A stretch of DNA of 64,000 nt from Macrostomum lignano (lineage: Eukaryota). The stretch is from the NCBI GenBank assembly GCA_002269645.1, contig NIVC01000396.1, positions 248,001-312,000 on the forward strand, written 5' to 3'. The translations under genes were made by a program, and so were the position numbers. The notes under the pieces were generated by a model, which worked only from the letters and a program-made list of their open reading frames with translations, was not told the origin of the DNA and made no database searches. Of the stretch, positions 243-55,382 are shown one piece after another. Every line of letters starts with the position of its first letter. Within the stretch, counting starts at the first letter, position 1.

Positions 243-416
243 TTGGGAAAGCTGACTAATAGTCTAATGAAAGACTGGCTGAAATGCCCAGAGTGCGTTA
301 CGTGATTTGATAAGAGATTAATAAATTTTTTTAAATAAAGTAATCATTGATTCTCTTGAATTTCATCGCATAATGTATCACAGAGATTATGAGGACATTA
401 GATTAGATTTTTAGTA

Positions 417-870
417 TATGGAGATTATCCTACGCTTGATAAGGAGATTGATATGGAGATTATCCTACACTTGATAAGGAGATTGATATGGAGATTATCC
501 TACACTTGATAAGGAGATTGATATGGAGATTATCCTACACTTGATAAGGAGATTGATATGGAGATTATCCTACGCTTGATAAGGAGATTGATATGGAGAT
601 TTAGCGGAATGGGCGACCCTCGCCTCCCCGCTGTGTCTACGGACCACCCTGCAGCTAAAAGATATGGAGATTATCCTACACTTGATAAGGAGATTGATAT
701 GGAGATTATCCTACGCTTGATAAGGAGATTGATATGGAGATTATCCTACGCTTGATAAGGAGATTGATATGGAGATTATCCTACGCTTGATAAGGAGATT
801 GATATGGAGATTATCCTACGCTTGATAAGGAGATTGATATGGAGATTATCCTACACTTGATAAGGAGACT
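417..870. repeat. 35-bp minisatellite (GGAGATTATCCTACACTTGATAAGGAGATTGATAT)n, decaying to about 1010
   Basis: Direct tandem copies, interrupted once at 602-660. Confidence 0.95.
602..660 (+). mobile_element. 59-bp micro-element, copy 1, with 12-bp TSD GATATGGAGATT (590-601, 661-672)
   Basis: 602-658 matches 46024-46080 at 55/57 nt. Flanked by a direct duplication of host repeat sequence. Ends in CTAAAA. Confidence 0.8.
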
Positions 871-2365: not shown

Positions 2366-2613
2366 AGATTCTGTTTTACGGTCAGTCTGATACAAAGAGC
2401 CTAGAATTTTTAGTATATTGGATTAACCTGTAGATTGGATCATATAGCGATTGCCCTTACAGAGAGATCTAATACGCTTTTAAGGGGTATTATAATTCTA
2501 ATAGAAATCTAACAGAGAAATCAGTAAGACTAAATAAGCATCCAATGGAGACACTAAGAATGTGACTAAGCGCAGTTTTCTTCCATTGCAGGCAGCAAAA
2601 CCAAAGGAAAGCG

Positions 2614-2814
2614 TCAAGACATTTCCCGACTCGGACTGCCGCCCAACGAGTCGAACAGGTCGGCAGAGAAGCGCAACAGGCTGGCATTGTCGGCCAGGCC
2701 GGAGGTGTCCAAGAATTGGCGGGACAGCAGCAGGGCGGCGGTAGAGTTGATCAGCGGCAGCACCTTCAACAGGGGCAGGGTCCGCTCGTGCAGGGACGCG
2801 TCTGAATTGAGGCC
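2614..2814 (-). CDS. PEX3: PEX3 exon 4 (last): GLNSDASLHERTLPLLKVLPLIN...LRFSADLFDSLGGSPSREMS*
   Basis: AG acceptor at 2816-2815, phase 0, TGA at 2616-2614. Resembles the PEX3 C-terminus (human SLPLAKIIPIVN...FAANVYEAF). Confidence 0.8.
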   Translation of the reverse strand, partial: GLNSDASLHERTLPLLKVLPLINSTAALLLSRQFLDTSGLADNASLLRFSADLFDSLGGSPSREMS

Positions 2815-3434
2815 CTGGATTCAGTGGGGGGGGGGGTGGCCAGTTATTTAGTTACAAACATTGCAATGATTTGCAGGAGCAAGCAGTCACGCTCATCCAC
2901 TCGTGACAGCGACCCAGACTTTCTCATTCATTGTCAGGCATGTTAAGGGTTTGGCCTTCATAACAAATTAATGTGGCTGCGCCCTCTACAAGAATACCAT
3001 CAAGCAAAAGTGAGCATTTGCTCTTCACAGTTGAAACGTGCACTGAATTTATTAGAAAGCCCGAAGCGGCCAAAAGTTTTTCCTGGCCTGGGACAGAGTT
3101 TGCTCAAACTGAGCGACTATCCAGTCTATTCTGCCAAGTGAAGAAATAATCTTATCAATTTAATTAAATGAGGCCAGTTTCGTGTCAGAGGCAAGAACAG
3201 AAACGAGAATACAGAAATCTGCTTTTAACGCATATGATTAGTTAAAAGTACACAAAAAAGAAGACTTATTAACGAAAGGAACGAAATATTCAATAGCTCA
3301 TTTAAAGTATCGATAGTTTAATAACTATTGGGATTTCAATAAATCTGCAGCTTCAGGCCAGAGAGACTAAAAAATGCGACACACAAGCGCACGAGTTCAC
3401 ATACAGGCTGACAGGCGTTCTCTGTTACACCCAC

Positions 3435-3881
3435 CTGATAGTGCGCGGTGAACACTCGCAGCAGCGCCATGCCGGCAGAGTCCAGCAGCTGCTTGAGCAC
3501 TCGGCCGGCCTCCGCTGAACGGAGCCGGGCGTCGGCCTCCGAGCAGAGCCGCTGGAGCAGCAGCTCGTCCCGTTGAAGGCCGCGACCGTCGTCGCCGGCT
3601 TCTCGCTGCAGCTGGCGCTGGCTGTCCATCAGGCTGTCGCGCAGGCTGGGCAGCAGGCGGGCCGCTGGAGCCGGCGAGGCGGCCGCGTCCGACTCGGGCG
3701 CCTGCAGCTTGGCCTCGAAGCCCACACGGAGCCGGTGCAGCAGGGAGTCCAGCCGGCGGAGGCCGAATTTCTCTCGGACATCCAGGCCGGCGCATTCGGC
3801 CAGGCAGTGCGACTCCAGCTGGCCGGCCAGGTCGGACACGTGCGACCGGGTGTCCAGCAGGCCGAGGAACCGGATCTTCAC
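3435..3881 (-). CDS. PEX3: PEX3 exon 3
   Basis: Acceptor CGCAG| and donor CAG|GTGGGT, 149 codons. LCSEADARLRSAEAGRVLKQLLDSAG resembles human [25 protein letters not shown]. Confidence 0.8.
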
Positions 3882-4144
3882 CTGCGGCGTGGGGGGGGGG
3901 AGGATAAGCTGAGCGGCACCTATGGGGATTCAGTGCTGCGGCTGCTGCCCACCAACCGCTTGTTGGTTGAGCTCCCCATCCCCGATGAAGACGGTATTCA
4001 GGCCAAGAAGCGCCCCCAGAATCGTTGCAGATAACGCAGGTAAAAAAGGTCTATGAGAATTCCCCACAGGAAGTTTCCCGCCGAGATTTTCCTGCAGAGG
4101 GGTTTTCCAGTTGGAATTTCAAGTGAAATAAAGTCGGATTTGAA

Positions 4145-4525
4145 ATCTAGTCTAGTCTAGTTCTAATCTAGTCTATTTAATGCCTATTCTAGTCTAGTCT
4201 AGTTCTAATCTAGTCTAGTCTAGTTTAATGTATAGTTTAGTCTAGCCTAGTTCGAATCTAATCTAGTTAAGTATTGTCTAGTTAATGTCTAGTCTAGTCT
4301 AGTCAATGTCTAGTCTAGTTAATGTATAGTTTAGTCTAGTCTAGTCTAGTCAATGTCTAGTCTAGTTAATGCATAGTTTAGTCTAGTCTAGTCTAGTTAA
4401 TGTCTAGTCTAGTTTAGTCTAGTTCTAATCTAGTCTAGTCTAGCTCTAATCTAGTCTAGTCTAGTTCAAATCTAATCTAGTCTAGTTAATATCTAGTCTA
4501 GTCTAGTTCTAATCTAGTCCAGCAT
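4145..4525. repeat. degenerate (TCTAG)n pentanucleotide satellite in PEX3 intron 2
   Basis: Tandem TCTAG/GTCTA units. Confidence 0.9.
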
Positions 4526-4617
4526 TGTCTATAGACTATTGTTTATATAGGATTTGAATTGAAATTCCGACTGGAAAAAAGTCTCGCGGGAAAATTCTCG
4601 TGTTTCCCGAAAAAATA

Positions 4618-5153
4618 CACTACGGAGATAGGAAGTTTTCATTTTTTCAGCACAAAAATTGTTATTGCGTTTGATAGGAGGCAGATCCAGTGTTCATCTT
4701 TTGATATGTTGTGCCTTTTTTATTGCTCTATCGATATTTATAAAGCTTTTCGTTTAGAAAATTAGGATTCTATGTTAATTTTTTATTCTACGTATATTTC
4801 CTGTATCTAGAAATCACAAAAATGCATGACACAGCTCCAATATTTGGTTTTATGAACCTATTTTATCATCTCTGTTACAAATATTTGCTACACAGTCGGG
4901 TAAGAATGATAAAATAGACTCATGAAGCTAAGGAGCCGAGCCGTGGCATTCTAATGTATTTCAAGCACAAGACACGCGAAACATACGTAGAATAAAAAAT
5001 TAACATAGAATCCTAATCCGAAAAGCTTTATAAATATCGATAGAGCAATAATAAAGGCACAACATATCAAAAGATGAGCACTGGATCTGCCTCCTATCAA
5101 ACGCAATAACAATTTTTGTGCTGAAAAAATGAAAACTTCCTATCTCCGTAGTG
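4618..5153. mobile_element. non-autonomous MITE/foldback element, about 175-bp TIRs, TA TSD
   Basis: 4618-4795 is the near-perfect reverse complement of 4983-5153 (one short indel, few substitutions). Ends are TA|CACTACGGAG...CTCCGTAGTG|TA. No ORF. Confidence 0.85.
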
Positions 5154-5258
5154 TATAAGTGCCTTCAAAACTTTTCTAAGAAACGAGGTTTCCCGTCCTT
5201 CTACTTAAGTCGTCCTTGATTTGAGGCGTGCTAGAATTCCTGTAGAGTGTACAGTCAC

Positions 5259-5516
5259 CTCCTCGCTGATCTCGTGCTGCCGCCGATTCCGACTATCAGA
5301 CGCGTCGCCGTCCTCATTAACAGCGGCGCCGGCGGCGTCCCGCTTCTGCTGGCAGAGCAGGCCAGCCAGTAGGTGCAGCTGGACATGGGCGCACAGCAAA
5401 GAGCCGCAGGACGCATAGACGCTGGCCAATAATCGGGCGAATGCGCGGGCGCGCAATTGGTCGCAGAGCTCGGCGCGCCGATCTGGCGCCGGTTTGGTGC
5501 GCAGCTCCGCCGTGAT
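5259..5516 (-). CDS. PEX3: PEX3 exon 2
   Basis: Acceptor GCAG|ATC and donor GAG|GTGACT, 86 codons. ITAELRTKPAPDRRAELCDQLRARAFARLLASVY...HVQLHLLAG resembles human [32 protein letters not shown]...RVQLNIIGG. Confidence 0.85.
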
Positions 5517-5607
5517 CTGCGCAGCAGGAACAAAGGAGGGGTGACGTAATTTTGTTACCTGCAGGCTTGACATAACTGTACCTCATGCACTAATTAACAA
5601 CAAATAC

Positions 5608-6790
5608 ACCTGAGCTCCCATCCCCAACACACACCTGCTGCTGCAGAGCTCCCATCCCCAACACACACCTGCTGCTGCTGAGCTCCCATCCCCAACACAC
5701 ACCTGCTGCTGCTGAGCTCCCATCCCCAACACACACCTGCTGCTGCTGAGCTCCCATCCCCAACACACACCTGCTGCTGCTGAGCTCCCATCCCCAGCAC
5801 ACACCTGCTGCTGCAGAGCTCCCATCCCCAACACACACCTGCTGCTGCTGAGCTCCCATCCCCAACACACACCTGCTGCTGCTGAGCTCCCATCCCCAAC
5901 ACACACCTGCTGCTGCTGAGCTCCCATCCCCAACACACACCTGCTGCTGCTGAGCTCCCATCCCCAACACACACCTGCTGCTGCTGAGCTCCCATCCCCA
6001 ACACACACCTGCTGCTGCTGAGCTCCCATCCCCAACACACACCTGCTGCTGCTGAGCTTTCATCTCCAACACACACCTGCTGCTGCTGAGCTCCCATCCC
6101 CAACACACACCTGCTGCTGCTGAGCTCCCATCCCCAACACACACCTGCTGCTGCTGAGCTCCCATCCCCAACACACACCTGCTGCTGCTGAGCTCCCATC
6201 CCCAACACACACCTGCTGCTGCTGAGCTCCCATCCCCAACACACACCTGCTGCTGCTGAGCTCCCATCCCCAACACACACCTGCTGCTGCTGAGCTCCCA
6301 TCCCCAACACACACCTGCTGCTGCTGAGCTCCCATCCCCAACACACACCTGCCGCTGCTGAGCTCCCATCCCCAACACACACCTGCTGCTGCTGAGCTCC
6401 CATCCCCAACACACACCTGCTGCTGCTGAGCTCCCATCCCCAGCACACACCTGCTGCTGCTGAGCTCCCATCCCCAGCACACACCTGCTGCTGCTGAGCT
6501 CCCATCCCCAACACACACCTGCTGCTGCTGAGCTCCCATCCCCAACACACACCTGCTGCTGCTGAGCTCCCATCTCCAGCACACACCTGCTGCTGCTGAG
6601 CTCCCATCTCCAACACACACCTGCTGCTGCTGAGCTCCCATCCCCAACACACACCTGCTGCTGCTGAGCTCCCATCTCCAGCACACACCTGCTGCTGCTG
6701 AGCTCCCATCTCCAACACACACCTGCTGCTGCTGAGCTCCCATCTCCAACACACACCTGCTGCTGCTGAGCTCCCATCCCCAACACACAC
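5608..6790. repeat. 34-bp minisatellite filling PEX3 intron 1, starting exactly at the donor site
   Basis: Minus-strand unit GTGTGTGTTGGGGATGGGAGCTCAGCAGCAGCAG, about 35 copies. Confidence 0.95.
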
Positions 6791-7075
6791 CTGCTCAACG
6801 CCAAGGTCAGCATCCAACTGAGCTGCGATGCCCGGCAACAGGGCGGCAACGGTGGTTGTGCAGTTCCGACCAGTGGAACGGAGAAACTGCGCCCGTTCCA
6901 GCTCGGACAGCAGCGCCGTCACCTCGTCGTCGCCCTGGCCGGCGCCGCGGCGACCGCCCGAGCGGCTGAGCCACCACCAGTGCAGCAGGTAGGCGCCGCC
7001 GCCAACCAGAGCTCCGCCAAGAGCCAGCTTGCCGCGGTGCCGCTTGATGAAACGCCAGGCGCGACCAAGCACCAT
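6791..7075 (-). CDS. PEX3: PEX3 exon 1 (N-terminal membrane-targeting segment)
   Basis: MVLGRAWRFIKRHRGKLALGGALVGGGAYLL resembles human [47 protein letters not shown] resembles FESNQRTCNMTVLSMLP. Donor CAG|GTGTGT. Confidence 0.88.
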
Positions 7076-22065: not shown

Positions 22066-22124
22066 GTGAGTGTCCAACGAAATTGATTAATATTTTATTA
22101 GTTTTTTAGTGAGTTAGTTAGTTA

Positions 22125-24076
<1,952 letters not shown>

Positions 24077-24599: not shown

Positions 24600-24654
24600 G
24601 TGAGCGCCTGCGGTGGGGTTCGGAAGCTGGTATTTATTTGGGACTTGAAACCCG

Positions 24655-25470
24655 GGATTAGGAGCTCGGGATTATTAGGAACTCGGGATTAGGAACTCGG
24701 GATTAGGAACTCGGGATTAGGAACTCGGGATTAGGAAGTCGGGATTAAGAACTCGGGATTAGGAAGTCGGGATTAAGAACTCGGGTTTAGGAAATCGGGA
24801 TTAGGAAGTCGGAATTAAGAACTCGGGATTAGGAAGTCGGGATTAAGAACTCGGGATTAGGAAATCGGGATTAGGAAGTCGGGATTAAGAACTCGGGATT
24901 AGGAAGTCGGGATTGGGAGCTTGGGATCAGGAACCCGGTATTAGGAAGTCGGGATTAAGAACTCGGGATTAGGAAGTCGGAATTAAGAACTCGGGATTAG
25001 GAAGTCGGGATTAGGAGCTCGGGATTAGGAAGTCGGAATTAAGAACTCGGGATTAGGAGCTCGGGATTAGGAAGTCGGAATTAAGAACTCGGGATTAGGA
25101 GCTCGGGATTAGGAAGTCGGGATTAAGAACTTGGGATTAGGAAGTCGGGATTAAGAACTCGGGATTAGGAAGTCGGGATTAGGAGCTCGGAATTAGGAGC
25201 TCGGGATTAGGAGCTCGGGATTAAGAACTCGGGATTAGGAAGTCGGGATTGGGAGCTTGGGATCAGGAACCCGTTATTAAGAATTCGGGATTAGGAATTT
25301 GGGATTAGGAATGTGGGATTAGAAAGTCGGGGTTAGGAAGTCGGGATTAAGAACTCGGGATTAGGAGCTCGGGATTGGGAGCTTGGGATCAGGAACCCGT
25401 TATTAGGAAGTCGGGATTAGAAATTTGGCATTAGGAATGTGGGATTAGAAAGTCGGGGTTAGGAACTCGG
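24655..25470. repeat. 14-bp minisatellite (GGAACTCGGGATTA)n
   Basis: Direct tandem units. Confidence 0.92.
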
Positions 25471-25651: not shown

Positions 25652-25944
25652 GTGAGAAAGCGTATTTAATCAGCCCCTTGCTTGCAGTGAAACAAAATGG
25701 ATTGAAGTTGTCAATAGAAATGTCAGGAGCTGCAGTTCCAAATTTGGATTGGAGCAATATTTAGCAATCAAATTTTTGTTTAACTAGGAAATTTATGGAA
25801 AATTTTCTGACTTTTATTAGTTCTGATTAATAATGGGCTTTCAATTTGGAGCAATTATTCCGAACTTGAATATGTTGAGTAAACTAAGAAAAATTACTGT
25901 GATAGTGTAATTCAGCACGTTGTTTCAAACCTTGTGAAGAAATT

Positions 25945-26160
25945 TGTTCACAGATTCACAACAATTATATTCACAGATTCACAACAATTATATTCACAGA
26001 TTCACAAGAATTACCTCCACAGATTCACAAGAATTGTATTCACAGATTCACAAGAATTACCTCTACAGATTCACAAGAATTTCCTCCAGAGATTCACGGG
26101 AATACTGCACATAGATTCACAAAAATAACCTTCACAGATTCACGGGAATCTTGTTCACAG
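25945..26160. repeat. degenerate ATTCACAGATTCACAAGA-type tandem repeat
   Basis: Tandem units. Confidence 0.75.
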
Positions 26161-26239
26161 AATCCCCTTACTGATATCATCAGATGAACTGTGCTCAAGC
26201 AATCACAGGAACTCCCCCTCCGTCTCCCCTTCCCCCCAG

Positions 26240-26778: not shown

Positions 26779-27054
26779 GTGAGGCCTTCCTTGGGTGAAA
26801 CTGCCGCGAATCTGGCAGCTGTAACTAAAATAAAGCAGTACAATTTTTCACTTGAGCAAAGGTAGCAACTACAGTGACAGCTAAAATTCAGAAAATGTAT
26901 AAACTAACAACAATCAAAACAACAAAAACAATAATAATGGCAACAAAAACAAAAATAACAACAACAATAACGACAACAACAGCAACAATAACGACAACAA
27001 CAACAGCAACAACACCCGCCGGCCTTTACTGCCGACCTGGAGAACCTTCTCCAG

Positions 27055-27121
27055 CCCCTACTAGGCGCCGCGTCTTCGTCGTGGGGGGGAGGTGTCCCTA
27101 TGGGATATCAAAGAGCGCCTA
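27055..27121 (+). ncRNA. HDV-like self-cleaving ribozyme fold at the element 5' end
   Basis: P2 TAGGCGC/GCGCCTA, P3 GCG/CGT, L3 TCTTCGT, P1 3' strand G7, P1.1 CT/AG, P4 GTGTCCC/GGGATAT, then C27109-AAA in J4/2. The P1 5' strand is ambiguous and imperfect. Confidence 0.6.
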
Positions 27122-27234
27122 AACCTCGGACACTCTGTGTCCCATCGGCTAGAAGAAGTTTGTGTCAACGGAAGCTGCAGCCCGCCGATGGCTTCCCGGC
27201 GGTTGAGGGTGGCAGTTGGGCCCACCACCTTCCC

Positions 27235-27282
27235 AAGCTGCGCTTAATCAGGGCCGGCGACATCGAAACCAACCCAGGACCC
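27235..27282 (+). other. 2A-like StopGo (ribosome-skipping) motif KLRLIRAGDIETNPG|P
   Basis: Exact D-[V/I]-E-x-N-P-G-P consensus preceded by a leucine-rich helix, in frame with the ATG at 27100. Confidence 0.85.
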
Positions 27283-30200
27283 CCCCCCCGTCGCACTGTG
27301 GCAAGGCCTGCTGCGGCAAGCCGCTCCGCGACAGGGCGCTGGTCTGTCGGCAATGCAACCGCGGTTTTCATCTCCAATGAATCTGCTCTGGGTTGAGCCG
27401 TTGGGCCTCGGACCGCGCTGTGCGCGAGAACACCTGGACTTGTTCCGACTGCTCACGTGGGCCAGTCTCATCCCCGGAGCCGCCGGGACAAGACACCGAG
27501 GTCACTGCTCAGCAAGACACTCCCGACCAGGCGGAGTCACCGGCCGAGGATCGGAGACTCACCCTGCTTGCGAGGATCAAAGAAGAAAAGCCTAACTGCG
27601 CCAAGTGCAAGAAGACCATCCGGGTGTCGACGGTGATTGCCTACTGTAACACCTGTGAGGCCTTTTTCCACAACGCATGCACCGAAGCCACCAGAGAACA
27701 GATTAAGCAAGAAGTCCGCAGGGGCCGCTGGCGGTGTCGTTTCTGTACCGAAGCCCTCACTACCGGTGGAGCTACGCACTCCTCGCCAGAAGCCGACCCC
27801 ACGGCCCACAACGAAACGCACCGCGGACGGAAAGGACCTGTCAATTACAAGGGCCTCAAGGTCCTGCAATGGAATGCGGACGGCATCCAAAACAAAATGG
27901 GAGAACTGGAGGAGCTGGTCCAACGCCTCAAAGTTGATGTCGTCATGATCCAAGAATCTAAGCTTGACTCCGTCTCCCGCACGCCAAAGATCCCCGGCTT
28001 TACCACCGTGAGAAAAGACCGACGAACGCTACGTTCCAGCGAGACGTACAAGGGAGGAGGTCTCCTCACGCTCATCCGCCAAGAAATCCCCTTTCGGCGG
28101 CTCAAAGGCTGGAGTGGGGGCACGGTGGAAGGCTGCCGCATCGTGATCAACCTTAGTGCCAAACAGCGCCTCGTGCTCACTAACATTTACCGGCCGCCCA
28201 TCAGGCGCAATGCTGGCGCCGACTGCCGGGAGCACCCGGACATCGATCTCTGGCTGAAGCCGCACCAGCGCGAGATTATTGCTGGCGACTTTAATCTCCA
28301 TCACACGACCTGGGGTAGTCTGCCTGGCCAGGGGCCCGAGGGCGCCGAACAAGCCAAAGCCCTGCTGGAGTGGTGTGACAGTAATGGGTATTGTGTCCTC
28401 AACTCGGGCTCCCTCAACCTGTCTCGATCGCCGCGACGGTGGAGAGAGTGCCCCCGACATCAGCCTTGCTAGCGCCGGCCTCGACGACCTCTGCTCGTGG
28501 GAGGCCCTTGACGAACTGGGCTCTGACCACAAACCCATTCTCATCACAGTGGATGGCGACCGTGCTAGCACCGAGCAGAAGATTTGTCTCGCCTGGGCCT
28601 GGCAGAAAGCTGACTGGAACAGCTACCAGGCCCAGTTCGAAGACGATAGCAATGGGCTCAACAAAGGCACTGTCAAGCAGCAAATCCAACGCCTCTGCTT
28701 TCGTATGAGTAAGGCGGCAAAAGCTTGCATTCCCATGAAGCGCGTCTCCTCCAAAAACAAGCCCTACTGGGATTCGGAGCTCTCTAGTCTTCGGGACGAA
28801 AGAAACAGACTCAGATCCCGTGGCGGTGACCCGGACGAGTGGAAGCGCAAGAATGCCGAGCTCAACAGGGCCTGCGCGGAGAAAAAAGCCGCCTTCTGGC
28901 AGGAATTTGTTCAGGACCTGTCTAGTTCCTCAGACATAAAAAAAGTGTGGCGTAACATTAAAACCCTAAGTGCTGGAGAGCAACCGACCGCGAAGAACGA
29001 AATCCTAGTGGCGGACGGAAAGGAGTGCAGCTCGGATCGCGACAATCAAATGCTTTTGGCCGATACTACGCCAAGATCAGCACCCTCAAGCATGACGCCG
29101 CTGACCGCGCCTTCAAAGTTAGCACCGCGAAGCGTTTGAATAAGTATCCCACGGGGACCTCCGAGCACGATTGCACCCTCACCATGGGAGAACTCAAACG
29201 AGTCATCTCACACCTCGACGTCACCAAAAAAGCCGGCCCCGACGGCATCGAAGCGGCTTTCTTCAGACACCTGCGGACTCGTGGCTCACGGCCTGGCTCA
29301 CGGTCTTTAATCGGTGCTGGTCCCTAGGGCACTGCCCGGGAGTCTGGAAGAAGGCGGTGATCGTCCCACTTTTGAAAGAGGGCAAAGACCCAGCCAACTG
29401 CAGCAGCTTCCGGCCTGTTAGTCTCACTTCCATCTGTCATCATCATGGAGCGCATTGTGATGGACCGGCTCATGCACTGGATCGAACTCAACAACACGCT
29501 GCAACCGTGGCAAGCTGGTTTTCAGAGAGGGCGTAGCTGCGAAGAGCAAGTGGCGCGTCTGGTCCAGGAAATCCAAGACCACTGGGAACAACGCCCGCCT
29601 CGCAAAACGATCGCTGTCACCCTTGACTGCTCCCGCGCCTTCGACCGGGTCTGGCGTACCCGCCTCCTTGCCCGTCTCATGGATGAGGGAGTCCCGGGTC
29701 GCATGGTGCACTGGTTTGCCAGCTTCCTGGAGGGGCGCCAGATTGCCTTCCGCGTGGGCGACACGATTGGCAAATGGAGGCCGCTTAAGGAGGGGGTGCC
29801 CCAGGGGGCTGTGTGCTCGCCGGTGCTCTTCCTCCTGTACATCAATGACTGGGCGGACTCCCTGGTCCCAGATGTAAACTACGCCGGCTTTGCTGACGAC
29901 CTGGGCGTCTGGGCCTCGGGCAGCAACATCCAGCAGATTGCGGAGCGCCTTCAACTGGCCATCGATCGCATCGACGCCTGGGCCACTGATCTCCGTATCG
30001 ATCTCAATCCCCTCAAAACTGAATGCTGTATCTTCTCGAGAGACCGCAGGGACCGCGACCGTACCCTCAACCTGTGCATCCGAGGCCAGCAACTCCCAAC
30101 CAGGCAGGAGCTGCGCTACCTGGGTGTCTGGATCGACAGCGGCCTGCTCTTCAAGCGGCAGTCCGACGAAGTTGCCGCCAAACTGCGCCGTCGTTGTGCT

Positions 30201-31580
30201 GTCCTGCGTGCACTGTCGCATCGCGAATGGGGGTGGGACCGCGCCACGCTTAGGACGGTGTATAAAGCCGTGGTGGAGTCTGTGGTTTGGCATGCGGCTG
30301 CAGCCTGGATGCCCTGGCTCTCCCAGACTCGCCTCAATGACCTGGACAGAGCCCAAAAAGTCGCTCTGAGACTTGTCTCCGGTCTACCAAGCTCGACTCC
30401 TAGCGTGGCCATCTACCGTGAGGCCGATTGTGTGCCCATCAGCCTGGAGGCCAAACGACAAGCGCTGGTCGCCGTCGAAAAGGCGCTCCGGCGGCCCGAG
30501 GCGGACCCCTGGAGGTCCAGGTGTGAACTCAGGACCCCCACCCGGCTCAAAGCCAACCGTGGCCTCCGCGAACAAGCCCACTCAGTGCTCAACGAGATCC
30601 TCCCACACAGCCGTCTCCCGGGAGCCTGGGTCAGAGCCCCGCCGTGGGACACGCTCAGCGGCTCGGACCGGCTGAGGCTCTATCCGCAACTGGTGAGACC
30701 GCTCCGTAAATCCGACAGTCAGCACACCCGCGATCCGATCATCGCCGACACTTTCCGAGAACGCCTGCCCAGTACCTGCTACTTTACGGACGGCTCCGCT
30801 TCGGGTGGCACCGCCAACGGCGGCGCCGCCTGGATCCTGTTTGACCAGGAGACGGGTACGATCATCCGGGGCGGCCACTCTGCAGCGGGCAGATGGTGCA
30901 GCTCCTTCGAAACCGAGCTCCGCGCGCTCCGAGATGCCGTCGTGGATGTCATCCAGCAGGACATTGGCACCGCCACCCTCCTCACTGATAGCCAGGCGGC
31001 CGTCAGAGCACTGATAGCCGACTGGCCCACCACTAACGCGCTACTCGAAGACCTGAAGGCCCTTCTTCGGCAAGCAGCTGGCCGTTGCGTTCTCACGATC
31101 CAGTGGATTCCCGGCCATGCTGGCGTGGCTGGTAACGAGTTCGTCGATCGCGAGGCCAAAGCCGCAGCTCTTCTGGATCAAGCCCAAGTGGCCATCTCGC
31201 TCGAAGCAGCCAAGCGGTTTATCTACCGCCGACTCGAGTACCTTCCGGACCTGACCGGCCATCTGAAGGAGACTTACCAAGGACGCATCACGCATCATAA
31301 CGGCAGCCGGTGAGAGCAAGTCCTCGTTGCGCAGGTGAGAGCTGGACACTGCCCCTCCTCGGCCTATTACGCTAAGCGCATCGGCAAAGCTCAGCTGGCC
31401 GAGTGCAGGCTTTGCGGGCTCGAGGTAGACCAATTCCACCTGGTCCACTGCCCTGCGATCGATGTCGCCCGAAGACAGAACAGCATCTGCGATCTGAAAG
31501 ACCTAGCCGATGGGAACCTGGTGGCGCGGCTCCTGGAGTGGATCCACTGAACCCCGCTCTAGGCGGCTGCACTCCGCACT

Positions 31581-31802
31581 CAACAACAACAACAGCAACA
31601 ACAACAACAACAACAACAACAACGACAACTACAACAAAAATAACAACAATAATAACAACAACAAAAACAACAACAACAACAACAAAAACAACAACAACAA
31701 CAACAACAACAATAATAATAATAATAGCAACGACAACGACAACTACAACACAAATAACAACAATAATAACAAAAACAACAACAACAACAACAACAACAAC
31801 AA
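31581..31802. repeat. (AAC/AAT)n microsatellite, right half of the Ingi target (left half about 26900-27014)
   Basis: Direct trinucleotide repeats. Confidence 0.92.
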
Positions 31803-31931
31803 AGACTCAAGTTTCTAAATCCATGCACTCAACTCACATCCGTTCAGAGCAGCTGACTTCAATCAGTGAAATAAAATTCTCTAGCAAGTCAACTCGGACT
31901 TACCACCGCTCCGACTCCCCAACCTATGCAG

Positions 31932-32082: not shown

Positions 32083-32149
32083 GTGAGTGTTTTTGTGGAA
32101 TAAGCGCAAAAGTTTGGTAGATAAGCACAGTTTGAGGTTAAGGCAGATT

Positions 32150-32795
32150 GCAGATAAGCACAGAGTAGGGTAGGTAAGCAGATGGTAGATGGTAGAGGGT
32201 GAGGGTGGATAAGCACAGTGTGAGGGTAGATAAGCACAGCGTGAGGGTGGATAAGCAGTGAGAGGGTAGATAAGCACAGCGTGAGGGTGGATAAGCAGTG
32301 TGAGGGTGGATAAGCACAGCGTGAGGGTGGATAAGCAGTGTGAGGGTGGATAAGCACAGCGTGAGGGTGGATAAGCAGTGTGAGGGTGGATAAGCACAGC
32401 GTGAGGGTAGATAAGCACAGTGTGAGGGTGGATAAGCACAGTGTGAGGGTAGATAAGCACAGTGTGAGGGTAGATAAGCACAGTGTGAGGGTAGATAAGC
32501 ACAGTGTGAGGGTAGATAAGCACAGTGTGAGGGTAGATAAGCACAGTGTGAGGGTAGATAAGCAGATGGTAGTTATGTGAGGGTAGATAAGCACAGTGTG
32601 AGGGTAGATAAGCACAGTGTGAGGGTAGATAAGCTCAGTTTGAGGGTAGATAAGCTCAGTGTGGGGGTAGATAAGCTCAGTGTGAGGGTAGATAAACACA
32701 GTGTGAGGGTAGATAAACACAGTGTGAGGGTGGATAAGCACAGTGTGAGGGTAGATAAGCACAGAGTGAGGGTAGATAAGCACAGTGTGAGGGTA
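32150..32795. repeat. 21-bp minisatellite (GTGAGGGTAGATAAGCACAGT)n
   Basis: Direct tandem units. Confidence 0.93.
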
Positions 32796-33293
32796 GACTT
32801 GGGAGCTGGGGGACAAAAAACCCCAAAATCTCACGCCTCAATGATTCGGATTTTTCAAAAATAATTTCCGACTAAAATTCCCAGTGAGCCGCCTGAGCCC
32901 TCCCACCACGACAGACTTGAAGAAGTTCTTAGCAAAGTGAATGAATATGTCATGCACAGTCAACAGACCAAATCCAAGGAAGGTCACAATAGAAAAACAA
33001 TTCTGAGTCACGCATCACGTGCGGAACTGCCTGTAGTCGTAAAATTGATTTTTTGAAGCTGCCCGTGGAAATGATTGACAGCAGCGGTTGGTGCAGTTTA
33101 ATCAGTCACTTTAAACAAGTCAAAATTATTCTTAGATCTATCATGCATACTTTGGATTATCTTTGCTGAGGGGGGGGGCAAAGAAGCTCCGACTCTCGCG
33201 ACTCGAGCTCTGCAGCTTGCCCTGCTGAGATGGGGCGGCGGCAGCTCTGGGCAGCGTTACAATCTGGTGAATTTTTATGAACTCAACTTTCAG

Positions 33294-36200
33294 GACTTCG
33301 TCAACAGGCGCCGCAGCAGAGGCAACTGGCAGGGCGAAGCCCTCGCCCTGGGCGACCTGGTCTACCGGGTCTGCCGGGAGCACCGGGGCTGCGGCACCGA
33401 CCCGGCCGTGGCCAGAGTTGTCCGGTTTTTCTCCGACCAGCTCGGCTCCGAGGAGGCCTGCAGCCGCCTGCAGGTCGGCAGCTGCTACACCGCCGACGCC
33501 TTTGTCGCCCTGCTGGCCGTCGGCAACATGGGCCGCGCTGGCGGCGGCGCCTCCGCCCTTGTAGGCTGCGCGGCCAATCCGCGCCTGGCGCTGGCGCACC
33601 GCGTCTTCGCGCTGCAATCGCTGCGCCGATTTGACTACGACAAGGACAACGACGCCGGGGCGCGCGACCGGCTGGCGCGGCTGCTGCTGGACGGCGCGCT
33701 GGACGCGGAGCTGCGCATCGCCGCTTACCGGGCCCTGGCCGCGATCGGCCTGACCGGCCAACGCGCCGACAGCCTTCGCTCGGCCGTCCGGCGGCTGCTG
33801 ACCAGCCCGAATGAGGACAGGCAAACCCAGCTATTTGTCCGAACCCACCTGTCCGGACTGGCCGGCGGGGCCTCCGACCCGCTGCTGGACAAGGCCGCGG
33901 TGGCCGAAGCCGCAAAACTGCTTCAAGAAGCAGCAGAATCGGCGCCGGACATTGCGAAGGAGCTGGACTGGCTGAGCTGGCGCGAGTACTCCAGCGCCTG
34001 GCGCCTGCAGCACTTCAGCCACGACTGGGCAACCGGCGGGCGCATTGAAGCCTCGGTGGTGTTCTCGCCGCAGTCGGCAATCCCGCGGTACATCGGCCTC
34101 AACCTGACGCTCATCGACCCTGGCCGAGGCCGGCAGGTCAACGCGCTGGAGCTCGGCCTGCGCATCGAGGGCGTAGACGACGAGGCGCACGAGGCCTACA
34201 AGCTCTTCGCCCAGCGGTTCGGAGCCTCAAAATCCCCCGGCATGGACATCTTTCTCCGACGCAGGGTGCGCCGGCAGACGGTCGGGGTGGACCTGACCCC
34301 GGAGCAGGAGAGCCGGATGCAGGCGGCGCAGGAGCCCCGGGTGGACATTGTGGTGCGGCAGTCCGGGGCCGAGGTCTCCCACAGCACCGTCAGTGGCATC
34401 GGCCTGACAGCGCCGCTGCAGCTCCTGAAGAACATCGACTTCTCCACCATCAGGCAGTTGATGGAGGTGCTGCCGCAGTTTAAGAAGTTCTTCGACAGCA
34501 AAAGGTCATCAATGTCGGCTGGCGTCCTGTCGGAGGAGGCCGTGTCGCTGCCGACGATCTCTGGCGCGCCGCTGATTGTGAAGAGTTCGGCGCACTACCT
34601 CACCGAGCTGCGGCTGGACAAAGTGCTCGACCTGAGCTGGACCGGAAACTCCTCGGCCAGGCTGGAGCTGCGCCCCGTGGCCGCGCTGCGACAGTCGCGC
34701 ACCGTCTCTGTTGACGCCCCGTTCGAGCGAATGGGCGTGCGGACCAACTTGAGCTTCCTGACGAACACGGGACTGGGGCTGAGCCTGGAGAGGGCCCGGT
34801 CTGACGAGGCCGACAGCGACCAGACGATCTCGATGAAGCTGGAGCCCCTGGACAAGCGGCAGAGTCTGGCGGACGCAAAGACTGACGCTGCGTTCTTCTG
34901 GCACGCGATCGGCGCAGACGGTGAAGCGACGCCGGTTGAGCAGCCGCTGGTGCCGTCGGAAGGAATGGAGCAGTCGGTGAGGTGCACCGACAACTTTATA
35001 AAGAAGCACTCGGGCCTGAAGCTCTGCGTGCAGTCCAAGAAGGTCTCGTCGGCTTCCTCCAGTTCAGCCAGCGGAGACACGGCAAGCCTTCTGAGCAGCC
35101 TGCGCCGCAGTCCGGGCAGCTTCCAGCTCTACCTGGAGAAGGATGACAGCCTTGGCGGATTCGAGCTCTATTTCCGGCAGAAGAGGCCGACTCCGCTTGA
35201 CCCTGGCAACAACTGGCTGGAGCTGCTGATCGGGGATCGGAACTCGCCTGACCGCATGCTGAAGCTGGCGCTGCGCTCGTCCCGACCCACCGGCAGCTCC
35301 AGCTGGCGATTCGAACTGATCAACCCGGTGTTCCCGGTGTCCCTGTTCGCCCAGGTGACCAACTCGACTAGCGAGTCTCAGCTGCAAGCGGACGTTCGAA
35401 TCGGCTCGGTTGAGTACAAGGCGGAGGGCGCGGCGCAATGGGCATCGGCAGATTCGCCGCAGATGCGACTGGCCGGCAGTTTCTATCGCAAGGACAAAGT
35501 CAGGCAGCGGGTGGAGATTTCCCTGGCGCACCGGATGGATGGCCGCGTGCTGGTGCTGCTGCCGCGGGCCAGCACCGCCTTCAACCTGACCCTGCAGAGC
35601 GGCAACCAGCTTCGACTTCTGTACGACCTGCAGACAGCGGCCGCCAACTTCACCTGGAAGATCGCCTCCGAGTACGCATCGCCCGCCGGGGTTCTGCACT
35701 CAGTGCAGTACCAGCTGAAGTACGAGAACAAGTTCAATAACAGCCGCAGGGACTACGGCGCCGTCATTTACGACTTGAAGGTGAGGAATGCGGAGGGGCG
35801 GCGGGTCGGGCACAGCCTGCACGCCAAACTGCAGCGCAGCATCGGCGCCATCAGCCGGGCCAACGTCAGCGTGCTGCACCAGCTGCGCCTCGGATCGGCG
35901 CTGCGACGCTCGCCGTTGGACTTCAAGCTGCAGGTCGGCCTTAGCGAGACCATCAACGGAGCGACGTTCAGCGCCGAGGGCAACGGCCAGCTGACCTACT
36001 ACAGGAGGGACACCGGCCAGGAGGTGACCGCCAAGCTTGAGGGCCTGAGAGTGAGCATGGAAGAGAACTCGAATATCGATCCCGTTGGTACCCAGTCTCT
36101 GTACGAAATCAACTGCGGCCTGGGCTACGAAGGCTACAAGGCCAGCTACAAGGGGGTGCTGCGCTACCTGCCCAGGCGGGACTGGGGGAGGCTGCGCCAG

Positions 36201-44720: not shown

Positions 44721-44792
44721 TGGAAGTCTGTTTGTCCATTTGGAGACTGTATCGGGCCTGTTTTTGAAGCCTGTTAGTTCCTGTTTTTGCAG

Positions 44793-47133
44793 CTGCCGCA
44801 CTCACTCGCCTCTCATCTGCACTTCCGCCAGAAGTCGGCCGTCGCCCACCTCAAGGAGTCGCTGCTGGACACCTGGATGTCGTCCGGCCTGCGTGCATTC
44901 GGCTCGGCGACCGACGCCCTGCTGCGGGCGGCCGGCGAGCGCCTGTTGAAGTCGGTGGACGCCAAGCGGCTGGCCGAGGAGGCGACCAACCCGCTGCTGG
45001 CCGACCTGACTGCGCTGAAGCTCTACGCCGAGGCCGTCGTCGAGGCGGTCGGCAGCGATCCGAGGCTCGGCGCCATCGTCCGACTGTTGAAGCGATTCAG
45101 CGGCGCCGCCTCCTGGCGAGTCGCTGAGCTGTCTGACTGGCTCGCCAGCCGCCTGTCCGAGGGCGGCGTCGGCCTCGTCGATCTGCGCCTGGCCGAGAGG
45201 GTCCAGCTGGCCGCCGACGCCGCGGTCGAGTTCGTCGACAGCCTGCCGCTGCTCGCCGCCTGGCGTGCCGGCCTGGACGCCGGCAAATCCGCGGCCGGCC
45301 TCGTCAGCGACTGGCTGTCCAGCTGCCGGGAGGTCTCGGACAGTTTCCTTCGCCGGATGCTGAGCTCCGGCGCCGCTGTGTCCGGCCGAGACGGCGCGAC
45401 CGCCTCGGTGCTGCGCCTGCTGTCCGAGCGGGCGAGCCAGCTGCTGTCGTTGGGCTCCGTCAAGGCGGAGATGGCGAAGGCGCTGCTGCAGATCGAGCTG
45501 GCCCTGAAGGCAGCGGTCAGCGACTCACTCGGGCTGCTGGCCGATGACCTGCTGCCATTTGCCATTGGCCACCTGGGCGACTTGGTCCGCCTAAAGGAGT
45601 GGCTGGACGAAGCGCTGTACCAGCTTCGGTTGTGGATCGACTTCGGCGCCGGGTCGGGCGCGGCCCAGCGGCAGGAGCGGCTCCTCAGCTGGCCGCTGTG
45701 GCTGGCGCGGCAGCTGGCTGGGCCGGGGTCGCTGGGCTACTGGCGCAACCTCGAAGACAGCTGGCGGCTGCTCACCAACGGCGAGTTCGCCGCCGCAGTC
45801 CGCCGCCTGCTGATGACTGACGCCTACGGGCTGCGCGTCTGGCGGCCTGTCTGCGACGCCAAATGCCGAGAAAGCGGAGACGCCGCCTTCGCCGCGGTGG
45901 TTGGCGACGTGTACCCGCCGGTGTACCTGGACAGCCTGAGCCCGCGGGTTTGGCGCCGCCGCCTGGCCCGAGTTCGATCGATTCGAGCAACGGCGCGTCG
46001 ATTCCGAGACCGACTGTTCGCTGTAGCGGAAAGGGCGACCCTCGCCTCCCCGCTGTGTCTACGGAACACCCTGCAGCTAAGACTGTTCGCCGCCTCGTCC
46101 GACTGCTACGTGCTGCTGTCGATGTTCAACGACTGGCGCCAGATGGACGCCGGCCTGTGGGACCCGTTGGCGCGCCAGCTGGCGATGCGGCACCGGACGG
46201 CGGTGCTGGCAGGCGGCCGCAGCCTCATCACCTTCGACGGGATCAGCCTGGTGAACCCGTTGCCATGCAGCTACGTTCTGGCGCACGACTTCCGGCTGAA
46301 TGAGTTCACCGTGGCCCAGAGCTACCGCGAAGTGAACGGGACGGCGGTGCGGCACGACCTGCTGGTGAGGTTCGGCAGCGTGCAGTACTCAATCAGCCCC
46401 AGCGGCGTTCTCAAAATCAACGGCCGCATCGAGAAGCTGCCGATGAGTCGCTACGTCGGCGGCCGGCTGGTGCAGGCGGAGCGCAAGAAGAGCCGCCTGC
46501 TCGTCCGCTTCCACGGCGAGACGCTGCGCAACACCCTGCTGCTGCGGTGCAACTCCATCACCGACTCCTGCGTGCTGCGGGTGCACCCTCTCTACCAGGC
46601 CCGCGTCGACGGCATGGCCGGCAGCAACGACGGCCACAGGGCCAACGACCTTCAAGGCGGTAGCCGGGACTCGCACATCCGCTACTGGACCTCCGGCAGG
46701 TGCCTCGCCACCGAGACCGGCGGACCCGACGCCACCCTCTCGCCGGCGGTGGAGTCGCCGGAAGCCGAGGCGAACTGCCAGCTGTGGTTCTCTCGGCGCA
46801 GCTTCTCGTTCGACAAGTGCTTCAGCACAGTCAACCCTCGGCCCTACCTGGACCTGTGCCGCGCCTTCGCCCGTCTCGGCAAGGACATCTGCGAGGTGGC
46901 CGTGCAGTACACCGACCGCTGCCGGAACGAGCTGGTGAACATCAACACGCCCTACAGCTGCGTCCGGTGCAGGGTCGACGAGGAGACGACCATCGTCAAG
47001 GACGACCTGATCAGCGAGCCGCGGGTGCTGCGCAAGCGCCTGCAGGCCGTCTTCCTGCTGGAGAACTCGGACTGCGTGGCCAGCGCCATCGGCCTGAGGG
47101 GCTCCTACATCAGCTACCTGGCCAAGCTCATCG
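44793..47133 (+). CDS. LLTP exon 8 (includes VWD and C8-like domains)
   Basis: Acceptor TTTTGCAG|CTG. TAVLAGGRSLITFDG...PCSYVLAHDF is VWD. CQLWF...KCFSTVNPRPYLDLC is C8-like. Donor G|GTGAGC, phase 1. Confidence 0.88.
46022..46080 (+). mobile_element. 59-bp micro-element, copy 2, inserted in frame in exon 8, with 10-bp TSD GACTGTTCGC (46012-46021, 46081-46090)
   Basis: The protein reads RLFA-VAERATLASPLCLRNTLQL-RLFA. 55/57 identity to 602-658. Confidence 0.82.
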
Positions 47134-47184
47134 GTGAGCCGGGGGTTCGCGGCCGGGGATTCCAGCGGCTTCCGAACTCCCGGA

Positions 47185-47731
47185 CACTCTCTCTCTCACC
47201 TCTCATACCCTCTCACACACCCTCTCACACAACCTCTCACACACCCTCTCACACACCCTCTCACACACCCTCTCACACACTCTCTCACACACCCTCTCAC
47301 ACACCCTCTCACACACCCTCTCACACACCCTCTCACACACCCTCTCACACACCCTCTGACACACCCTCTCACACAACCTCTCACACAACCTCTCACACAC
47401 CCTCTCACACACCCTCTCACACACCCTCTCACACACCCTCTCACACAACCTCTCACACACCCTCTCACACACCCTCTCACACACCCTCTCACACAACCTC
47501 TCACACAACCTCTCACACACCCTCTCACACACCCTCTCACACACCCTCTCACACACCCTCTCACACACCCTCTCACACAACCTTTCACACAACCTCTCAC
47601 ACACCCTCTCACACACCCTCTCACACACCCTCTCACATACCCTCTCACATCTTCTCTCATACCCTGTTTCACACTTTTTTCAAATCCTCTTTCACTCCCT
47701 CTCTCACACCCTTTTTCACACCCTCTCTCAT
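47185..47731. repeat. 12-bp minisatellite (CCCTCTCACACA)n, left part; continues at 51843-52310 after the LTR element
   Basis: Direct tandem units. Confidence 0.93.
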
Positions 47732-47946
47732 TGTTATGTCTTTTTCTCCGACGTGGAGCTGCTACATTTAAGTAAGAAGACAATGGTTCGCTTAAGCGGT
47801 TCGAGCTATCGTTTTGCTCCGGTTGATACAAACTCCTCTTGGGATTCATCTCGTAACTACTTTATTATAAAATAATAGGTTGTGCCCTAGACAACAAAAC
47901 ATTGGGCTGGGGGCATACTCTGTGTCTTCTCTGCTAATATACAACA
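47732..47946 (-). repeat. 3' LTR (215 bp, TG...CA), preceded by PPT AAAAGGGGGAA (47947-47957)
   Basis: Matches 50282-50496 in inverted orientation, with 3 mismatches seen. Confidence 0.92.
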
Positions 47947-48435
47947 TTCCCCCTTTTGTCAATAAAAAGTTGCATTGTCAGTTATCCGGAATTATTCACT
48001 GTATTGCAACCAATCCGGTTTTCTCAATTTGCTTCGATCCCTCAGTATCCTTGTGCCCACGCCTTCTGCTCCAGGGTCAGCGTCATCCTGGTCTGTGTCC
48101 GCTGTCTGAGATTCTCCTCGGCTTGGCACGTCTTGGACCGGTTGAGTTGATTCACTCTCTCGCCGCTCTTTCTCGGTGGTAGTTTTGTCGCTCTGAACTC
48201 TCCTAGGATCCTTCAGAATAGGCGGTAGGTGGTGAGCCTCCGGCTTGTTCTGTCCAGGTAATTCTGCACTGACAATTTGGTCGATGTGTCGCTTCCAGAC
48301 TTGTCCGTTGACCAACAGTCTATAGGACAGCGGTCCTGTGCGGGCGATCACCTTGGCAGAGATCCACCTGTTCTCTCGCTCCCTTCTGAAGTCCAACGTC
48401 AGAACTGAGTCTCCGTCCTGAAATTCTCGAATAGT

Positions 48436-50013: not shown

Positions 50014-50281
50014 GTTAGTTGGTGTTGGAGCTTCATGAATTGCCCGAACTTTCTCTTTCGAGGGATGGGTGCGTGCGTGCGAGGAGGGTGCGTGAGAGAG
50101 TGTGAAAGAGAGGGTGAGAGAGAGTGTGAGAGAGAGTGAGAGAGGGGAGAGAGAGGGTGTGACAGAGGGTGTGAGAGAGAATGTGTGTGAGGGTATAAGA
50201 GAAGGTGTGAGAGAGAGGGTGTGAGAGATATGAGAGTGGTTGTAATAGGGGTGTGAGAGAGGGTGCGTGAGAGGGTATGAG

Positions 50282-50516: not shown

Positions 50517-50519
50517 GCC

Positions 50520-52327: not shown

Positions 52328-55382
<3,055 letters not shown>

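What the first reader, a model, noticed from the sequence alone, without database searches (positions are those of the whole stretch)
590..672. Tiny (59-bp) structured mobile element, copy 1, interrupting a minisatellite with its own TSD
Seen: one unit of a regular 35-bp array is interrupted by TAGCGGAATGGGCGACCCTCGCCTCCCCGCTGTGTCTACGGACCACCCTGCAGCTAAAA. It is flanked by a 12-bp direct duplication (590-601 and 661-672), and 57 nt of it recur at 46024-46080 with 2 mismatches and a different TSD. It folds by eye into AGCGG/CCGCT plus GGGCGA/TCGCCT stems and ends in a short A run. The first 12 nt fit a Pol III A-box pattern (TRGCNNARYNNG), but I see no B box. Established: variable-length TSDs and variable A-rich 3' ends are hallmarks of target-primed reverse transcription. 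Inference: this is a very small non-autonomous retroposon, or the conserved 3' tip of a LINE/SINE, that has moved recently. I do not recognise it as a known family.
Basis: partly seen in the sequence, partly recalled or inferred. Interest (0 to 1): 0.8.

Follow-up and report, generated by a model that had tools for sequence, protein, structure and literature searches.

The report
Tiny 59-bp retroposon-like flatworm repeat
This is a real 57-59-bp dispersed repeat in the flatworm Macrostomum lignano, each copy flanked by its own target-site duplication; it most likely is a very short retroposon moved by a LINE element, and one copy sits in frame inside a yolk-protein-like gene, but only two independent insertions could be examined, so its source and family remain unidentified.

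Summary
Removing 602-672 restores a perfect 35-bp array, so a 59-bp insert with a 12-bp duplication sits there. A second copy (46022-46080, 2 mismatches over 57 nt) has its own perfect 10-bp duplication. The window is Macrostomum lignano or a very close relative: its vitellogenin-like gene is 98% identical to PAA83202.1. Copy 2 lies inside a coding exon of that gene. It adds 23 codons in frame. It is also present, with the same duplication, in an independently assembled duplicated locus (NIVC01000428.1). So it is not an assembly artefact, and it predates that duplication, so it is not very recent. The variable duplication length, the 2-4 A at the 3' end and near-identical 5' ends fit retroposition of a discrete short RNA by LINE machinery. 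The A-box match is at chance frequency and the hairpin is not exceptional. There is no match to Rfam, to either LINE 3' end in the window, or to about 30 kb of other M. lignano sequence. I found no further copies, and Dfam and Repbase could not be queried. It is probably an ordinary, unusually small SINE-like or tail element. Interest is modest.

The parts
416..868 (+). 35-bp minisatellite that hosts copy 1. It lies between a PEX3-like gene (minus strand, about 7075 to 3336) and the next minus-strand gene (ATG at 241).
   Evidence: TRF; register printout; Pfam Peroxin-3 hits.
590..601 (+). Left target-site duplication of copy 1 (GATATGGAGATT).
602..660 (+). Copy 1 of the element: TAGCGG...GCAGCTAA plus AA, 59 bp.
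661..672 (+). Right target-site duplication of copy 1.
46012..46021 (+). Left target-site duplication of copy 2 (GACTGTTCGC).
   Evidence: It is identical in L001.
46022..46080 (+). Copy 2 of the element: TG plus TAGCGG...GCAGCTAA, 59 bp. It is read in frame as part of a coding exon (AVAERATLASPLCLRNTLQLRLF together with the duplication).
46081..46090 (+). Right target-site duplication of copy 2.
44787..47200 (+). Last large exon of a vitellogenin-like (large lipid transfer protein) gene that hosts copy 2. The VWD domain begins about 40 codons downstream of the insert, in the same frame.
   Evidence: ORF. Pfam VWD E = 5.5e-7. Same-frame similarity to the paralogue P0003 on both sides. There are no gaps against L001 over 2018 bp.
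27015..31802 (+). Context only: LINE 'A' (PHD, AP-endonuclease, RT, RNase H, (CAA)n tail). It is a candidate source of retroposition machinery in trans, but its tail does not match the element.
   Evidence: Pfam; sequence; absent from L001.
52340..54720 (-). Context only: LINE 'B' (RT, RNase H, short (GTAA)n-like tail). Its tail does not match the element.
   Evidence: Pfam.

Best explanation
The element is a discrete, very short (57-nt core, about 59-61 nt in all) non-autonomous retroposon of Macrostomum lignano. A short RNA with a defined 5' end (UG)UAGCGG... and a 3' end ...GCAGCUAA(A)n was copied into the genome by the endonuclease and reverse transcriptase of a LINE, through target-primed reverse transcription. 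The bottom strand is nicked at the left edge of what becomes the duplication, and cDNA is primed from that 3' OH. The top strand is then cut 10-12 nt downstream, and fill-in synthesis produces the duplication. What is shown: there were two independent integration events with precise duplications of different length, the same polarity and a short variable A run, and APE/RT LINEs are present and recently active in the same genome. What is inferred: the RNA intermediate, the LINE partner, and that the unit is full length rather than truncated. One copy landed in a coding exon. Because 59 + 10 = 69 nt has no stop in that frame, it persists as 23 extra codons in both duplicated copies of the gene.
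For: Both duplications are exact, at 12 and 10 bp. The 57-nt core is 96.5% identical between the copies. The copy-2 state inferred by comparing L001 and copy 1 differs from copy 1 at a single position. The 5' ends of two independent insertions differ by only 2 nt, which fits a defined transcript start better than random 5' truncation. The 3' ends carry AAAA and AA. The terminal inverted repeat is only 4 bp and the duplication length is not fixed, which argues against a cut-and-paste transposase. LINEs encoding AP-endonuclease, RT and RNase H are in the window. LINE A is absent from the colinear locus L001, so LINE machinery has been active since the duplication. Copy 2 is reproduced with both junctions in an independent contig, NIVC01000428.1. 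Both targets read GAGAYY|GAY at the left edge of the duplication. This motif was found post hoc from two sites. A rough hand estimate puts the chance of that much identity at about 0.01-0.05.
Against: Only two independent insertions could be examined. None turned up in about 30 kb of other M. lignano sequence. The A run is only 2-4 nt. No Pol III promoter is supported, and there is no terminator. There is no Rfam match at E <= 10. The tails of the two LINEs in the window, (CAA)n and (GTAA)n-like, do not match the element, so no partner LINE is identified. No RNA evidence was available. Fifty-nine bp is shorter than any SINE I know of; this rests on my own knowledge and was not checked against a database.
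Confidence: 0.5

Rival explanations
1. The two copies are extreme 5'-truncated 3' tips of a longer LINE or SINE that is not present in the window. The mechanism is the same (target-primed reverse transcription), but the unit is not a 59-nt element in its own right.
For: Tail-only copies are common for LINEs; this is established knowledge, not tested here. Copy 2 carries 2 extra 5' nt (TG) that could be templated from a longer parent. The element has no recognisable promoter of its own.
Against: Two independent truncations ending within 2 nt of each other would be an unlikely coincidence. Neither LINE 3' end in the window matches. No longer related sequence was found in about 120 kb of M. lignano DNA examined.
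Confidence: 0.25
2. It is a miniature DNA transposon (MITE) moved by a transposase.
For: The ends form a 4-bp inverted repeat (TAGC...GCTA). Mutator-like elements can give 9-11-bp duplications; this is my own knowledge, not tested here.
Against: The inverted repeat is only 4 bp. The duplications differ in length (12 and 10 bp). The ends are offset by 2 nt between copies. The element has polarity, with an A run at one end only.
Confidence: 0.07
3. It is filler DNA or RNA captured during double-strand-break repair from an abundant cellular source. One candidate is a 5S-rRNA-like RNA: positions 33-50, GTCTACGG-ACCACCCTG, resemble the 5' end of vertebrate-type 5S rRNA.
For: Local alignment to a 5S sequence recalled from memory scored 28, and only 1 of 2000 shuffles reached that score.
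Against: End-joining repair does not create 10-12-bp target duplications. Two captures with the same 57-nt boundaries are unlikely. Rfam gives no 5S or other hit at E <= 10. The 5S sequence came from memory and from another phylum, and many RNAs were considered informally before this one.
Confidence: 0.05
4. Copy 2 is an 'introner': a transposon-made spliceosomal intron (GT at 46023 to AG at 46076, 54 nt) that is spliced out.
For: The window copy contains GT...AG spanning 54 nt, a multiple of 3, with a C-rich stretch before CAG.
Against: In L001 the GT is GA (TGAAGCGG), yet the frame stays open. Donors of the confirmed introns of this gene are GTGAG-type and the introns are AT-rich. Copy 1 has no GT at that position.
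Confidence: 0.03
5. It is an assembly or chimeric-read artefact.
For: None was found. The frameshifts elsewhere in the gene suggest some indel errors in the assembly.
Against: Copy 2, with both junctions, is present in a separate contig of GCA_002269645.1 that differs from the window at 1.6-9% of sites. Copy 1 has a clean duplication and restores the array exactly when removed.
Confidence: 0.02

Closest known systems
SINEs (tRNA-, 7SL- or 5S-derived short interspersed elements mobilised by LINEs)
   Same: It is non-coding, short and dispersed. It has variable-length target-site duplications, an A-rich 3' end and a defined 5' end.
   Different: It is far shorter (57-59 nt) than SINEs as I know them, which are roughly 80-500 bp. 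No supported internal Pol III promoter was found (A-box at chance, no B box). There is no tRNA, 7SL or 5S match in Rfam, and no demonstrated tail shared with a LINE.
5'-truncated 'tail-only' LINE copies
   Same: It is a short 3'-terminal fragment with duplications and a short tail, in a genome with active APE/RT LINEs.
   Different: It matches neither LINE 3' end available. Those LINEs carry microsatellite tails, (CAA)n and (GTAA)n-like, whereas the element ends in A2-4. The two copies share nearly the same 5' end.
Retroposed small RNAs (U6, snoRNA or 5S retro-pseudogenes made by LINE machinery)
   Same: Its size is typical of a small RNA. It has a predicted 5' hairpin, duplications and a short A tail.
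   Different: No parent RNA gene has been identified, and there is no Rfam family match. The weak resemblance to the 5S 5' end rests on memory only.
Exonised transposable elements (for example Alu exonisation, or in-frame TE-derived coding segments)
   Same: Copy 2 contributes 23 in-frame codons to a protein-coding exon and is retained in both duplicated gene copies.
   Different: It was inserted directly into an exon and is read through, rather than recruited through new splice sites. Expression and function of the host gene were not tested, and there are frameshifts upstream in the window copy.
MITEs
   Same: It is small, non-coding and flanked by duplications.
   Different: It has no real terminal inverted repeats, its duplication length varies, and it has polarity.

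Membership tests
SINE | Internal Pol III promoter (A and B boxes, or 5S-type A/IE/C boxes) | tested here: not met
   The A-box-like pattern is at chance frequency (15 observed, 17.8 expected). It is absent from copy 2 in the window and in L001. No B box is seen. ARAGORN and Rfam found nothing.
SINE | Target-site duplications of variable length and an A-rich or simple-repeat 3' tail | tested here: met
   Perfect 12-bp and 10-bp duplications, with AAAA and AA tails.
SINE | High copy number dispersed across the genome | not testable with these tools
   There were 2 independent insertions in about 94 kb of non-redundant M. lignano sequence. The whole genome was not searchable. Exact-core scans of the metagenome, viral and prokaryotic collections were empty.
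SINE | 3' region shared with a partner LINE | tested here: not met
   No match of 12 nt or more to the 3' ends of LINE A or LINE B, or anywhere else in the window. Other LINE families of the genome were not available.
Truncated LINE tail | Sequence identity to the 3' end of a LINE consensus | tested here: inconclusive
   Negative for the two LINEs in the window.
MITE / DNA transposon | Terminal inverted repeats and a duplication length fixed for the superfamily | tested here: not met
   Only 4 bp of terminal complementarity. The duplications are 12 and 10 bp.
Introner / spliceosomal intron | Conserved GT-AG boundaries and removal from mRNA | tested here: not met
   The GT is replaced by GA in L001 while the open frame is kept. 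The donor differs from the GTGAG donors of this gene. Splicing itself could not be tested because no RNA data were available.
5S-rRNA-derived element | Significant match to the 5S rRNA family model | tested here: not met
   No RF00001 hit at E <= 10 for either copy. There is only a 17-of-21 nt resemblance to a 5S 5' end recalled from memory.

The most novel reading that the evidence does not exclude
The 57-nt unit is a complete, self-standing retroposon, which would make it about the smallest known. It would be transcribed as a discrete small RNA, possibly related to the 5' end of 5S rRNA, and inserted with a sequence preference (GAGAYY|GAY) by a flatworm LINE. It would also be able to add in-frame coding segments to genes.
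Probability: 0.15. Interest if true: 0.55.

Novelty: new member of a known kind. Interest (0 to 1): 0.3.

Why it matters
If the 57-nt unit is full length, it would set a lower size limit for what a LINE reverse transcriptase will recognise and mobilise. It would also be a handy minimal substrate for studying retroposition in a transgenic flatworm model. The exon insertion is a clean natural example of a mobile element adding 23 codons to a protein and surviving a genome duplication. If it is only the tail of a catalogued LINE or SINE, it is routine repeat annotation in a genome described as hidden polyploid and assembled with many redundant scaffolds (PMC8629364, PMC10468722).

Tried and rejected
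1. I searched the window for further or degenerate copies with blastn-short (word size 7). Only the two copies were found.
2. Exact scans with a 27-nt core and a 28-nt 3' half found nothing in the JGI metagenome collection, IMG/VR or the prokaryotic genome collection.
3. blastn against plasmids, to exclude vector or bacterial origin, gave no match.
4. Rfam gave nothing at gathering threshold on the window or on L001-L003. Permissive scans at E <= 10 around both copies gave no relevant hit. ARAGORN found no tRNA.
5. The search for homologous proteins with two pieces of the vitellogenin-like gene returned nothing. The exhaustive HMMER search then identified the organism.
6. I tried to collect more M. 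lignano DNA to find more copies.
   - A LINE RT profile search gave only distant LINEs and one M. lignano UniRef entry with no contig.
   - Exact look-ups of LINE ORFs from the window found nothing on record.
   - Two paralogue loci, L002 and L003, held no copy.
   - Twenty further hits checked for M. lignano origin yielded only one, P0004.
7. The orthologous site of copy 1 could not be reached. It lies about 12 kb beyond the start of L001.
8. Alignment to the paralogue P0003, as a protein-level empty site, failed because the paralogue model lacks about 100 residues there.
9. Literature searches for M. lignano SINEs or non-LTR elements, and for the sequence string itself, found nothing relevant.
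10. The M. lignano spliced leader (PMC8629364) shows no similarity to the element by eye.
11. The repeat finder output was swamped by tandem arrays. I replaced it with a masked self-BLAST.

Full report
**Observation.** A 35-bp minisatellite (416-868, TRF) is broken once, by TAGCGGAATGGGCGACCCTCGCCTCCCCGCTGTGTCTACGGACCACCCTGCAGCTAAAA (602-660). This insert is flanked by GATATGGAGATT on both sides (590-601 and 661-672). Deleting 602-672 restores a perfect 35-nt register, and the other units of the array show the uninterrupted site. A periodicity scan of about 25 tandem arrays in the window found no other foreign interruption. The 57-nt core recurs at 46024-46080 with 2 mismatches; none of 100 shuffles gave any match, and blastn-short gave E = 1e-23. 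That copy is flanked by a perfect 10-bp repeat, GACTGTTCGC (46012-21 and 46081-90). Both inserted segments are 59 bp but offset by 2 nt. Copy 1 is the core plus AA. Copy 2 is TG plus the core.

**Secondary claims.**
- The AGCGG/CCGCT plus GGGCGA/TCGCCT hairpin is the predicted minimum-energy fold (-19.3 and -19.0 kcal/mol). It is not unusual for the composition (z = -1.8 and -1.2).
- The three substitutions seen among the three available sequences fall outside the stems apart from one terminal wobble pair. That would happen by chance about one time in four, by my hand estimate.
- The 'A-box' pattern TRGCNNARYNNG occurs 15 times in the window against 17.8 expected. Copy 2 does not meet it.
- Rfam gave nothing at gathering threshold. 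Permissive scans at E <= 10 around either copy gave nothing relevant, and no tRNA-like gene was found.

**Organism and context.** The window is eukaryotic. It has GC-rich exons, AT-rich introns and intergenic DNA, and dozens of minisatellites.
- An exhaustive HMMER search with the long ORF 33267-36866 hit PAA83202.1 of Macrostomum lignano at 98% identity. More distant M. lignano paralogues were also found.
- The gene is a vitellogenin-like large lipid transfer protein (Vitellogenin_N, open beta-sheet and VWD domains).
- Comparison with UniRef A0A1I8GT35 confirms GTGAG...CAG introns at 25653-26239, at about 26781-31930 and at about 32086-33292.
- Copy 1 lies in intergenic DNA between a PEX3-like gene and the next minus-strand gene, whose ATG is at 241.
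- Copy 2 lies inside the last large exon (44787 to about 47200), some 40 codons upstream of the VWD domain and in the same frame. The 59 + 10 = 69 nt add 23 codons without a stop.

**A duplicated locus as control.** The contig carrying PAA83202.1 (NIVC01000428.1, locus L001) is colinear with window 13020-46804. Identity is 91-95.5% in intergenic DNA and 97-98% in exons.
- M. lignano is described as a hidden polyploid, and its Mlig_3_7 assembly contains many redundant scaffolds (PMC8629364; abstract of PMC10468722). L001 is therefore most simply a duplicated (homeologous) or haplotypic copy.
- Copy 2 is present in L001 with the same 10-bp duplication. It differs at two bases, TGTAGCGG to TGAAGCGG and GGAAAGGG to GGAATGGG. 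The second L001 state matches copy 1, so the original copy 2 differed from copy 1 at one position only.
- Over 2018 bp of this exon the two loci differ at 32 sites (12 synonymous, 20 non-synonymous) with no gaps. Two of the 32 sites lie in the element.

Three conclusions follow.
- Copy 2 is not an assembly artefact.
- Its insertion predates the divergence of the two loci, so 'recent' does not hold for this copy.
- It is read through rather than spliced. The only candidate GT donor is lost in L001 while the frame stays open, and the donor is unlike the GTGAG donors of this gene.

**Retroposition machinery.** The window holds two non-LTR elements with AP-endonuclease, RT and RNase H domains: LINE A (about 27015-31580) and LINE B (52414-54720, minus strand). 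It also holds a Gypsy-like pol fragment.
- LINE A carries a (CAA)n tail and sits inside an (AAC)n microsatellite within an intron.
- L001 has the uninterrupted microsatellite, which is an empty site. LINE retroposition has therefore occurred since the two loci diverged.
- LINE B ends in a short (GTAA)n-like run.
- Neither 3' end, nor anything else in the window, shares 12 nt or more with the element.

**Mechanism.** Several features fit target-primed reverse transcription of a short RNA by LINE proteins acting in trans. There are two independent integrations with exact duplications of different length. Both have one polarity and a 3' A run of variable length. There are no real terminal inverted repeats.
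- The two 5' ends differ by only 2 nt. This fits a defined 5' end, meaning a discrete unit of about 57-61 nt, better than random truncation of a long element.
- Two copies cannot exclude a truncation hotspot or a longer parent, and the extra TG of copy 2 could be templated.
- Both target sites read GAGAYY|GAY at the left edge of the duplication, where the first nick would fall. The motif occurs 15 times in the window, 10 of them in the minisatellite. It was defined post hoc from two sites and is only a lead.
- No RNA evidence, promoter or partner LINE was found.

**Attempts to find more copies.** The whole genome was not searchable with these tools.
- Exact-core scans of the metagenome, viral and prokaryotic collections were empty.
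- Plasmids gave nothing.
- Two further M. lignano loci, L002 and L003 (about 30 kb), contain no copy.
- Exact look-ups of LINE ORFs from the window and a LINE profile search gave no usable M. lignano contigs.
- The orthologous site of copy 1 lies about 12 kb beyond L001 and could not be fetched.
- The literature and sequence-string searches found nothing relevant on SINEs or non-LTR elements in this species.
- By eye, the element shows no similarity to the M. lignano spliced leader.

**A lead that rests on memory.** Positions 33-50 of the element (GTCTACGG-ACCACCCTG) resemble the 5' end of vertebrate-type 5S rRNA. Only 1 of 2000 shuffles scored as well against a 5S sequence I recalled. Rfam's 5S model gives no hit, the comparison sequence comes from another phylum, and I had considered many RNAs informally. 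I treat this as untested.

**Verdict.** The finding is real, and the retroposon reading is the best available, at about 0.5 for a discrete mini-retroposon and about 0.25 for the truncated tail of an unseen LINE or SINE. The promoter, structure and recency claims are not supported. The most interesting addition is that one copy was inserted directly into a coding exon and has been kept in frame in both duplicated gene copies. Novelty is probably 'new member of a known kind', pending a Dfam/Repbase and whole-genome check. Interest is modest.

Noticed in passing
window 26906-31802; L001 13780-13998: LINE A (PHD, AP-endonuclease, RT, RNase H, C-terminal CCHC, (CAA)n tail) is inserted inside an (AAC)n microsatellite in an intron of the vitellogenin-like gene. 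The colinear locus L001 has the uninterrupted microsatellite, which is an empty site. This looks like a recently active LINE that targets microsatellites.
   Followed up: partly
window about 37650-37730 and about 39240-39350: The vitellogenin-like reading frame shifts (0 to 2 to 1, then back) relative to the UniRef model A0A1I8GT35. These are either assembly indels or decay of this gene copy. The L001 gene model also stops early, at 1741 aa.
   Followed up: partly
window 47200-52310: A 221-bp inverted repeat (47729-47949 and 50279-50499, 98% identical) and three arrays of the same 12-bp unit ACCCTCTCACAC (47207-47649; 50094-50281 in reverse; 51843-52306) surround a Gypsy-like RNase H/integrase and RT fragment (48436-51217, minus strand). 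The first array extends the vitellogenin-like ORF artificially as (PSHT)n.
   Followed up: no
window 4615-5156: A 568-bp region matches its own reverse complement at 82% identity, so it is a large palindrome. It lies within the PEX3-like gene region.
   Followed up: no
L001 4046-4714, against window 16995: There is a 669-bp insertion/deletion difference between the two duplicated loci, with no obvious target-site duplication. It could be a deletion in the window or a transposable-element insertion in L001.
   Followed up: no
window 584-592 and 46006-46014: Both insertion sites share GAGAYY|GAY at the left edge of the duplication. The motif occurs 15 times in the window, 10 of them in the host minisatellite. 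It may reflect an endonuclease preference or microhomology, but it rests on two sites and was found post hoc.
   Followed up: partly
window 634-651 and 46056-46073: GTCTACGG-ACCACCCTG resembles the first 21 nt of vertebrate-type 5S rRNA recalled from memory (1 of 2000 shuffles scored as well). The Rfam 5S model does not support it.
   Followed up: partly
window 22098-24076, 24649-25470 and 63574-64000: There is a 2-kb (TTAG)n array, and minisatellites whose units contain TTAGG or TTAGGG-like motifs (AACTCGGGATTAGG; TTAGGGATCTCTGGGGCAGCTCACTT). These could be interstitial telomere-like repeats.
   Followed up: no
window 2400-7075, minus strand: This is a PEX3-like (Peroxin-3) gene. Its first exon ORF runs into a 34-bp minisatellite (5610-6795) that is open in several frames.
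   Followed up: no
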